A DNA stretch of 62,967 bases, counting the filler, from Octopus bimaculoides (taxonomy: Eukaryota): the NCBI RefSeq assembly GCF_001194135.2. It is 3 parts of 3 records of this genome, joined end to end, with 100 filler letters (N's around TTAATTAATTAA, not from the genome) between each part and the next. Parts side by side here need not be neighbours in the genome. Positions count along the whole stretch, not along the records: positions 30,116 to 57,965 come from NC_068990.1; 2 more parts are not named here. One strand, written 5' to 3'. The notes under the pieces are model-generated. The model made no database searches and was not told where the DNA came from. It saw nothing but the letters and a program-made list of their open reading frames with translations. How positions within the stretch are numbered: the first letter of the stretch is position 1; each line of letters starts with the position of its first letter. Positions 48,787 to 48,983 of the stretch are shown one piece after another. Both the position numbers and the translations under genes were made by a program.

Positions 48787-48983
48787 AAGTAGTTGTATGC
48801 TGTCAACTTAATGTGACAGTTCCCTGAAGGGAATAATACTACTGTTGGTTAGACCTAGGAAGCTGCACATTCCTGAAATGTGTCAAGGCCGACAGGAAGC
48901 GGTGCAGCTTCCTAGGTCTAACCAACAGTAGTATTATTCCCTTCAGGGGACTGTCACATTAAGTTGACAGCATACAACTACTT
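48787..48983. repeat. Near-perfect inverted repeat: 82-bp arms, 33-bp spacer
   Basis: 48787-48868 is the reverse complement of 48902-48983, except for one mismatch (T48821 / G48949). Confidence 0.97.

What the first reader, a model, noticed from the sequence alone, without database searches (positions are those of the whole stretch)
48787..48983. 82-bp near-perfect hairpin 97 nt downstream of the exon 1 donor, with a single A:C mismatch in the pre-mRNA
Seen: the arms match at 81 of 82 positions, and the 33-nt loop can pair further (TTCCTG/CAGGAA). On the transcribed minus strand the mismatch is A48821 opposite C48949. It matches none of the SINE families here and has no TSD directly flanking the arms. 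Established: long perfect dsRNA is a substrate for ADAR and Dicer, ADARs favour A:C mismatches, and stems near 5' splice sites can alter splicing. Caveat: the A has a 5' G neighbour, which ADAR disfavours, and the mismatch may be a simple mutation. Inference: candidates are an editing-inducer element, a hairpin/endo-siRNA or miRNA source, or a very young fold-back element. Near-identity in a CpG-decayed intron implies recent origin, arm conversion or selection.
Basis: partly seen in the sequence, partly recalled or inferred. Interest (0 to 1): 0.72.

Follow-up and report, generated by a model that had tools for sequence, protein, structure and literature searches.

The report
Young hairpin-shaped retroelement insertion in intron
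The near-perfect 82-bp hairpin is part of a 252-bp mobile-element-type insertion with a 13-bp target-site duplication; a related octopus-like species has the same site empty, so it is a recent insertion and not a conserved regulatory RNA.

Summary
The hairpin is real. Its arms are 48787-48868 and 48902-48983, matching at 81 of 82 positions, with a 33-nt loop. RNA folding energy is -159.8 kcal/mol (z = -24). It starts 97 nt inside intron 1 of a NIM1-like Ser/Thr kinase gene on the minus strand.

It is not free-standing. It belongs to a 252-bp insertion (48732-48983) made of a one-sided 55-nt tail plus the hairpin. The insertion is flanked by an exact 13-bp direct repeat, TAACCTAAAGTTT (48719-48731 and 48984-48996).

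An orthologous contig from a related species (L001, 87-91% intron identity) carries one copy of the 13-mer and no insertion. That is a clean empty site.

The arms differ by 1.2%, against 9-13% between the two species, so recent origin explains the near-identity. Neither selection nor arm conversion is needed.

The architecture points to target-primed reverse transcription with self-priming. It has a variable-type long TSD, no terminal inverted repeats, head-to-head copies, a 6-bp palindrome at the inversion junction and a tail on one side only. The closest described pattern is the head-to-head insertion of Penelope-like elements. Family membership could not be tested.

No copy, Rfam family or protein match was found elsewhere. 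Any ADAR editing would most likely be incidental. Molluscs are reported to lack an endo-siRNA pathway.

The parts
48719..48731 (.). Left copy of the target-site duplication, TAACCTAAAGTTT
   Evidence: Exact 13-mer repeat. It is present once at the orthologous empty site in L001, as TAATCTAAAGTTT on this strand.
48732..48786 (-). One-sided 55-nt 'tail' of the insertion. It is unique sequence and would be the 3' end of the element if the element is sense on the minus strand.
   Evidence: It lies between the left TSD copy and the left arm and is absent from L001. It contains two small stem-loops, but their folding energy is not significant (z about -1).
48787..48868 (-). Hairpin arm 1 (82 nt)
   Evidence: It carries T48821, which is A in the pre-mRNA, at the single mismatch.
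48869..48901 (-). The 33-nt inversion junction or loop. It holds a 6-bp palindrome (48870-48875 with 48893-48898) around a 17-nt apical loop, plus a 1x3 internal loop (A48869 opposite GCG 48899-48901).
48902..48983 (-). Hairpin arm 2 (82 nt), the inverted copy of arm 1. It ends exactly at the right TSD copy.
48984..48996 (.). Right copy of the target-site duplication, TAACCTAAAGTTT
   Evidence: Removing 48732-48996 makes the window colinear with L001.
49081..50782 (-). Coding exon 1 of the host gene, a NIM1-like Ser/Thr kinase. The donor G of GTAAGT is at 49080.
   Evidence: ORF; homologs; tblastn
41604..41876 (-). Exon 2 of the host gene (kinase domain, EKVAIKILDK...). It sets intron 1 at about 7.2 kb.
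   Evidence: Pfam Pkinase match

Best explanation
The hairpin is the body of a 252-bp, lineage-specific, non-autonomous retroelement-type insertion in intron 1 of a NIM1-like kinase gene.

Shown: a 13-bp staggered target site was duplicated, and the orthologous site in a related species is empty.

Inferred mechanism: the insertion was made by target-primed reverse transcription of a short RNA whose 3' end is the 55-nt tail, sense on the minus strand like the host gene. After tail, arm and junction were copied, a second inverted copy of the same 82 nt was made. This could have happened by self-priming (snap-back) at the small TTCCTG/CAGGAA palindrome, or by a second priming event. Either route gives two head-to-head 5'-truncated copies with a tail on one side only.

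This is the architecture described for Penelope-like element insertions. A LINE reverse transcriptase with hairpin-priming and DNA-templated activity could produce the same thing.

The single arm mismatch is a later point mutation or a copying error.

Inferred consequence: the pre-mRNA carries an 82-bp duplex that ADARs would be expected to bind and hyper-edit. This is a by-product, not a selected function.
For: - Exact 13-bp direct repeat bounding 48732-48983. A shared 13-mer anywhere in the 150-nt flanks arose in 4 of 3000 shuffles.
- Empty site in ortholog L001. After removing the element and one repeat copy, the two sequences align colinearly across GGAAAAATAAACAAACTTTAGGTTAGTTGAAATGG.
- The arms differ at 1/82, against 9-13% intron substitution divergence between the species. 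P(<=1 difference) is 0.005 or less if the arms were as old as the split. The TSD copies are 13/13 identical.
- The termini are not inverted repeats (AGAAATAAT... versus ...CAACTACTT), and 13 bp exceeds the fixed TSDs of DNA and LTR elements. LINE-type TSDs are variable in length (PMC8969392).
- Described hallmarks of PLE insertions are an adjacent inverted 5'-truncated copy, a palindrome at the inverted junction interpreted as self-priming, an optional one-sided tail of 30-40 bp, and a TSD (PMC8557442; PMC3846280).
- PLEs, LINEs and SINEs are reported as recently active in Octopus vulgaris (PMC13282606).
- LINE-1 ORF2p extends short hairpins, copies DNA templates and switches templates (PMC10830420).
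Against: - No second copy or relative of the element was found, so no family, no source RNA and no reverse-transcriptase partner is identified.
- There is no poly(A) or clear microsatellite tail. The putative 3' end reads ...GTATTATTTCT.
- No hammerhead ribozyme, tRNA, 5S or 7SL head was found.
- The tail is 55 nt, against the 30-40 nt typical of PLEs.
- GCG opposite A at the junction does not fit a simple snap-back primed by a perfectly paired 3' end.
- Only one outgroup is available, so an older insertion followed by precise loss in the L001 lineage is excluded only by the age argument.
Confidence: 0.62

Rival explanations
1. The whole 252-bp unit, hairpin included, is one copy of an established non-autonomous mobile-element family of this genome, for example a hairpin-bearing SINE-like or PLE-dependent element. 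On this view the hairpin pre-existed in the source and was not made at this insertion.
For: The insertion has a TSD and an empty site. Hundreds of unclassified SINE and MITE families are reported as recently active in octopus. The asymmetric junction (1x3 internal loop plus a 6-bp stem) looks more like an inherited structure than like a clean snap-back product.
Against: No other copy or fragment lies in the 28-kb piece, whereas the abundant SINEs occur many times there. An 81/82 stem with no bulges, equal in apparent age to the perfect TSD, fits a duplication made at or close to insertion. Copy number in the host genome could not be measured.
Confidence: 0.25
2. The hairpin is a selected functional RNA element of the kinase gene. 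Candidates are an ADAR editing-inducer element, a splicing modulator next to the exon 1 donor, or a Dicer/miRNA source.
For: An 82-bp near-perfect duplex lies 97 nt from the donor, in the sense orientation of the pre-mRNA. Long intronic stems can raise editing at nearby sites in mammals (PMC5654063 and PMC3479170, listed). An A:C mismatch is a favoured ADAR context (established knowledge).
Against: It is absent from the orthologous intron of a related species, while exon 1 and the donor are conserved. There are no compensatory changes to count. The best Rfam hit, mir-31_2, scores 40.7 bits against a gathering score of 97, and the stem is more than twice miRNA length. Molluscs show no dedicated endo-siRNA pathway (PMC12479628). 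The mismatch A has a disfavoured 5' G.
Confidence: 0.06
3. The hairpin is an assembly or library fold-back artefact, or a DNA-level templated insertion made during break repair without any mobile-element machinery.
For: The scaffold contains N gaps. No independent assembly of the same species could be found.
Against: An artefactual fold-back duplicates adjacent genomic sequence and makes no TSD. Here the arms, loop and tail are all foreign to the locus, and a 13-bp target sequence is cleanly duplicated. End-joining repair does not generate a 13-bp duplication.
Confidence: 0.05

Closest known systems
Penelope-like element (PLE) insertions: head-to-head inverted 5'-truncated copies or solo inverted pLTRs
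   Same: An inverted 5'-truncated copy sits directly next to a direct copy. A short palindrome lies at the inverted junction. An extension ('tail') is present at one end only. The unit is flanked by a TSD. The host clade has recently active PLEs.
   Different: There is no RT/GIY-YIG ORF, no hammerhead ribozyme and no demonstrated similarity to any PLE. The tail is 55 nt, not 30-40 nt. The TSD is 13 bp, against 8-10 bp in the rotifer examples. The whole unit is only 252 bp.
LINE-1 5'-inverted insertions made by twin priming
   Same: Both are TPRT products with an inverted 5' segment and a discrete TSD in the 12-18 bp range (PMC11702581).
   Different: Twin-priming junctions carry only 1-10 bp of duplication or deletion, because the two cDNAs copy adjacent parts of the RNA. 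Here 82 nt are copied twice. There is also no poly(A) tail.
MITEs and fold-back DNA transposons
   Same: Both are short, non-coding and hairpin-forming, and both are an insertion with a TSD.
   Different: The inverted repeats are not terminal, because 55 nt of unique sequence separate one arm from its TSD. The true termini are not complementary, and a 13-bp TSD fits no known TIR superfamily.
Inverted Alu pairs and editing-inducer elements as ADAR substrates
   Same: Both are a long intronic duplex of mobile-element origin inside a pre-mRNA, and both are an expected target of promiscuous A-to-I editing.
   Different: This duplex was made by a single insertion, not by two neighbouring repeats. 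The Gabra-3 inducer element is evolutionarily conserved (PMC3479170), whereas this one is lineage-specific. No editing data are available.

Membership tests
TPRT-type retroposon (LINE-mobilised SINE or orphan retrocopy) | Target-site duplication of variable length, typically about 5-20 bp, directly flanking the insertion | tested here: met
   Exact 13-bp TAACCTAAAGTTT at both ends
TPRT-type retroposon (LINE-mobilised SINE or orphan retrocopy) | Presence/absence polymorphism between lineages, with a clean empty site | tested here: met
   L001 has one copy of the 13-mer and no insertion
TPRT-type retroposon (LINE-mobilised SINE or orphan retrocopy) | Defined 3' end with poly(A), a microsatellite or a LINE-matching tail | tested here: inconclusive
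   The end reads ...GTATTATTTCT, with only two ATT units, whereas the local SINEs carry long (ATT)n tails. No LINE was available for comparison.
TPRT-type retroposon (LINE-mobilised SINE or orphan retrocopy) | Pol III head derived from tRNA, 5S or 7SL (for a SINE) | tested here: not met
   ARAGORN found none. Rfam at E<=10 gave no tRNA or 5S match; the only SRP-clan hit was a sub-threshold bacterial small SRP match (20.4 bits against a gathering score of 40, E=0.07), which is not a metazoan 7SL head.
TPRT-type retroposon (LINE-mobilised SINE or orphan retrocopy) | Multiple dispersed copies in the host genome | not testable with these tools
   There are no copies in the 28-kb piece. The public DNA collections scanned do not cover cephalopod genomes.
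Penelope-like element insertion | Inverted 5'-truncated copy adjacent to a direct copy (head-to-head) | tested here: met
   The 82-nt arms are in head-to-head orientation. The feature is described in PMC8557442 and PMC3846280.
Penelope-like element insertion | Palindrome at the inverted junction | tested here: met
   TTCCTG pairs with CAGGAA, 48870-48875 with 48893-48898. Such a pair would arise by chance in a 33-nt loop roughly 5% of the time (my estimate).
Penelope-like element insertion | Optional 30-40-bp tail at one end only | tested here: inconclusive
   A one-sided tail is present but is 55 nt long.
Penelope-like element insertion | Hammerhead ribozyme motif in the pLTR (canonical clades; absent in Naiads) | tested here: not met
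   No hammerhead family at E<=10
Penelope-like element insertion | Sequence identity of the repeat to the 3' end or pLTR of an RT/GIY-YIG-encoding element | not testable with these tools
   There is no RT or EN ORF in the piece, and no octopus repeat library is at hand.
L1-type twin priming | Inverted and direct segments copy adjacent RNA parts, with a junction overlap of only about 1-10 bp | tested here: not met
   82 nt are present in both orientations, against the 1-10 bp reported in PMC11702581.
MITE / TIR DNA transposon | Terminal inverted repeats abutting a TSD of family-specific length (2-11 bp) | tested here: not met
   The termini AGAAATAAT... and ...CAACTACTT are not complementary, and the TSD is 13 bp.
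miRNA precursor | Match to a curated family at gathering score, or a stem of about 35 bp with conservation | tested here: not met
   The best hit, mir-31_2, scores 40.7 bits against a gathering score of 97. The stem is 82 bp, and the structure is absent in the ortholog.
hpRNA / endo-siRNA locus | Long inverted repeat processed by a dedicated siRNA Dicer/Ago pathway | not testable with these tools
   The structure is present. PMC12479628 reports no siDicer or siAgo and no endo-siRNAs in molluscs, including O. bimaculoides. No small-RNA data are available here.
ADAR editing-inducer element | Long intronic stem near an edited site, conserved, and itself edited | tested here: not met
   The stem is present, but it is not conserved: the site is empty in L001. 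Editing itself cannot be tested.

The most novel reading that the evidence does not exclude
A single retroelement insertion created, in one step, a near-perfect 82-bp intronic duplex 97 nt from the exon 1 donor of a neural-type kinase gene. In an octopus, with its very active ADAR system, this young hairpin may already act as an ADAR-recruiting (editing-inducer) or splicing-modulating element. More generally, self-primed head-to-head retroelement insertions may be a routine source of new ADAR substrates in cephalopod genes.
Probability: 0.08. Interest if true: 0.6.

Novelty: new member of a known kind. Interest (0 to 1): 0.3.

Why it matters
The result turns a striking 'mystery hairpin' into a dated event: a recent insertion with a clean empty site in a sister lineage. 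It is therefore a candidate presence/absence marker. It is also a natural experiment for what an 82-bp perfect intronic duplex does to editing and splicing in a cephalopod. It further shows that a single retroelement insertion can make long dsRNA without two neighbouring repeats. It does not reveal a new class of RNA element.

Tried and rejected
- Copy search in the piece. The arm with up to 3 mismatches, and blastn at word size 7, found only the two arms themselves.
- Exact 20-26-mer scans. Metagenome contigs (2 scans), viral contigs (2) and prokaryote genomes (1) gave no hits. These collections do not cover cephalopod genomes, so this is weak negative evidence.
- Protein search. All stop-free translations of the element, concatenated, were searched against 5.8 billion proteins. 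Nothing scored at E<=0.01, so the element is non-coding and is not a NUMT or gene fragment.
- Independent assemblies of the same species. Exact look-ups of two window ORFs were not on record. Only one octopod dataset covers this locus, so the third protein search was not spent.
- Rfam. The whole piece, and the element alone at E<=10, gave only a sub-threshold mir-31_2 hit driven by the perfect stem, and no hammerhead.
- tRNA scan. No tRNA was found.
- The tail as a LINE-type 3' stem-loop. Its two small hairpins are not better than shuffles (z = -1.15), so no claim is made.
- Classical twin priming. Rejected because of the 82-nt overlap.
- MITE. Rejected because the termini are not inverted repeats.
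- Identity of SRR11869385. It is not mentioned in the paper library.

Full report
**1. The observation**

The inverted repeat is present exactly as described.
- The arms are 48787-48868 and 48902-48983. They match at 81 of 82 positions and are separated by 33 nt.
- The one mismatch is T48821 opposite G48949 on the + strand. On the transcribed minus strand this is A opposite C, with a 5' G.
- Inside the 33 nt, TTCCTG (48870-48875) pairs with CAGGAA (48893-48898). This leaves a 17-nt apical loop and a 1x3 internal loop (A48869 opposite GCG 48899-48901).
- The minus-strand RNA folds at -159.8 kcal/mol, against -53.6 +/- 4.4 for dinucleotide shuffles (z = -24).

**2. Host gene**

- The minus-strand ORF 49034..50782 ends in ...RIGFYRIRGELGSGNFSSVKLGIHTLVK. 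It is followed by GTAAGT, whose G is at 49080.
- Mollusc homologs include one named NIM1 kinase. They lose similarity at exactly this point, or continue with EKVAIKILDK.
- That continuation is found at 41876-41604 on the minus strand. The rest of the kinase domain lies at 35636-34878.

**3.

- An exact 13-mer, TAACCTAAAGTTT, lies at 48719-48731 and again at 48984-48996.
- The right copy abuts the right arm. The left copy lies 55 nt to the left of the left arm.
- A shared 13-mer anywhere in the two 150-nt flanks arose in only 4 of 3000 shuffles.

**4. The decisive comparison**

- The last 144 residues of exon 1 found one close relative, P0001 (97% identity). It is encoded on a 1430-bp Logan contig of run SRR11869385, here called L001.
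- L001 is 92% identical to the window in exon 1. In the intron, substitution identity is 91% (88 of 97) upstream of the site and 87% (424 of 489) downstream.
- Its alignment to the window breaks at 48984 and resumes further on.
- When 48732-48996 is removed from the window (252 bp plus one copy of the 13-mer), the two sequences align straight across the site. The window then reads GGAAAAATAAACAAACTTTAGGTTAGTTGAAATGG and L001 reads GGAAAAATAAACAAACTTTAGATTAGTTCAAATGA.
- This is a textbook empty site. The hairpin belongs to a 252-bp insertion that duplicated 13 bp of target.

**5. Age**

- The arms differ at 1 of 82 positions (1.2%), and the TSD copies at 0 of 13.
- If the arms had diverged for as long as the two species (9-13%), one or fewer differences would have probability 0.005 or less.
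- An octopus repeat study equates a Jukes-Cantor distance of 0.09 with 25 My (PMC13282606). On that calibration the arms are of the order of 2 My old, with an upper limit near 9 My. The species split would be about 12-18 My.
- These are rough figures of my own. They borrow a rate from O. vulgaris, and the window's species is not known.
- Recent origin is sufficient. Neither conversion nor selection is needed.

**6. What kind of insertion**

- The termini (AGAAATAAT... and ...CAACTACTT) are not inverted repeats. A 13-bp TSD fits no DNA-transposon or LTR class, whereas LINE-type target-primed reverse transcription gives variable TSDs (PMC8969392).
- The layout, read on the minus strand, is: inverted arm, junction with a small palindrome, direct arm, one-sided 55-nt tail.
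- Classical L1 twin priming gives 12-18-bp TSDs and inverted 5' segments, but only 1-10 bp of overlap at the junction (PMC11702581). Here 82 nt are copied twice, so that model does not fit.
- The layout does match published descriptions of Penelope-like element insertions. These describe an adjacent inverted 5'-truncated copy, a palindrome at the inverted junction interpreted as self-priming, an optional one-sided tail of 30-40 bp, and a TSD (PMC8557442; PMC3846280).
- PLEs, several LINE clades and hundreds of SINE families are reported as recently active in O. vulgaris.
- A LINE enzyme could also produce this layout. ORF2p extends 7-bp hairpins, copies DNA templates, adds untemplated bases and switches templates (PMC10830420).
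- Points that do not fit neatly: no poly(A) or clear microsatellite tail, no hammerhead ribozyme, a 55-nt tail, and GCG opposite A at the junction.

**7. Family membership could not be tested**

- No other copy or fragment lies in the 28-kb piece, although the abundant (ATT)n-tailed tRNA-type SINEs recur there many times.
- Exact-word scans of the metagenome, viral and prokaryote collections found nothing. A six-frame translation search of 5.8 billion proteins also found nothing.
- None of these resources covers cephalopod genomes well, so the copy number in the host genome is unknown.
- Rfam gives only a sub-threshold mir-31_2 hit, 40.7 bits against a gathering score of 97. The score comes from the perfect stem. 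ARAGORN finds no tRNA.

**8. Function**

- The structure is absent from the ortholog, while exon 1 and the donor are conserved. It is therefore not a conserved regulatory element of this gene.
- A survey of 32 molluscs, including O. bimaculoides, found no siRNA-type Dicer or Ago and no endo-siRNAs (PMC12479628). This argues against a hairpin-siRNA role.
- The stem is more than twice the length of a miRNA precursor.
- An 82-bp perfect duplex in a nuclear pre-mRNA is, from established ADAR biology, an expected substrate for promiscuous A-to-I editing. Long intronic stems can raise editing at nearby sites in mammals (PMC5654063 and PMC3479170, listed).
- Here any such effect would be an untested by-product of a young insertion.

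**9. Artefact**

- A fold-back artefact would duplicate neighbouring genomic sequence and would not create a TSD.
- Here the tail, arm and junction are all foreign to the locus, and a 13-bp target is cleanly duplicated.
- No independent assembly of the same species could be found to confirm this directly.

**10. Verdict**

The 'young fold-back element, recent origin' reading is supported and sharpened. The functional readings are unsupported.
- It is an ordinary kind of event, a recent retroelement-type insertion, with an unusually clean and instructive architecture.

Noticed in passing
window 48416-48500; 53712-53742; L001 726-811 and 1075-1150: The insertion's target site lies inside an older local repeat. 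The L001 stretch around the empty site also aligns at 76% to window 48500-48416. TAACCTAAAGTTTGT recurs at 53712-53726 with 84% similarity over 31 nt.
   Followed up: partly
window 31935-32190, 33178-33305, 37571-37860, 42400-43200, 44281-44524: There are many copies of tRNA-derived SINEs with long (ATT)n tails, seen as (AAT)n on the + strand. They share no similarity with the hairpin element.
   Followed up: partly
window 49400-50782 (minus strand): Exon 1 of the NIM1-like kinase encodes a roughly 450-residue low-complexity N-terminal extension rich in N, S, G and T. It includes near-identical 30-residue repeats (WSVQEPKEEVRNSGSGRSCGSG...).
   Followed up: no
window 40166-40293 / 40833-40960, and 40464-40676 (minus strand): An older inverted repeat is present here (128 nt, 71% complementary, arms 539 nt apart). 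Between its arms lies a sub-threshold Rfam MIR841 hit of 54 bits against a gathering score of 200. It is probably a decayed transposable-element structure.
   Followed up: no
L001 839-910 versus window about 48650: The related species carries about 60-70 nt that the window lacks, including ...CTATTATTATAGGCACAA..., which resembles a fragment of the local SINE. This is a second lineage-specific indel in the same intron.
   Followed up: no
window 34142-34553, 31709-31718, about 52978: The piece contains runs of N (scaffold gaps), next to long TA and TG microsatellites. This shows that the source is a gapped scaffold assembly.
   Followed up: no
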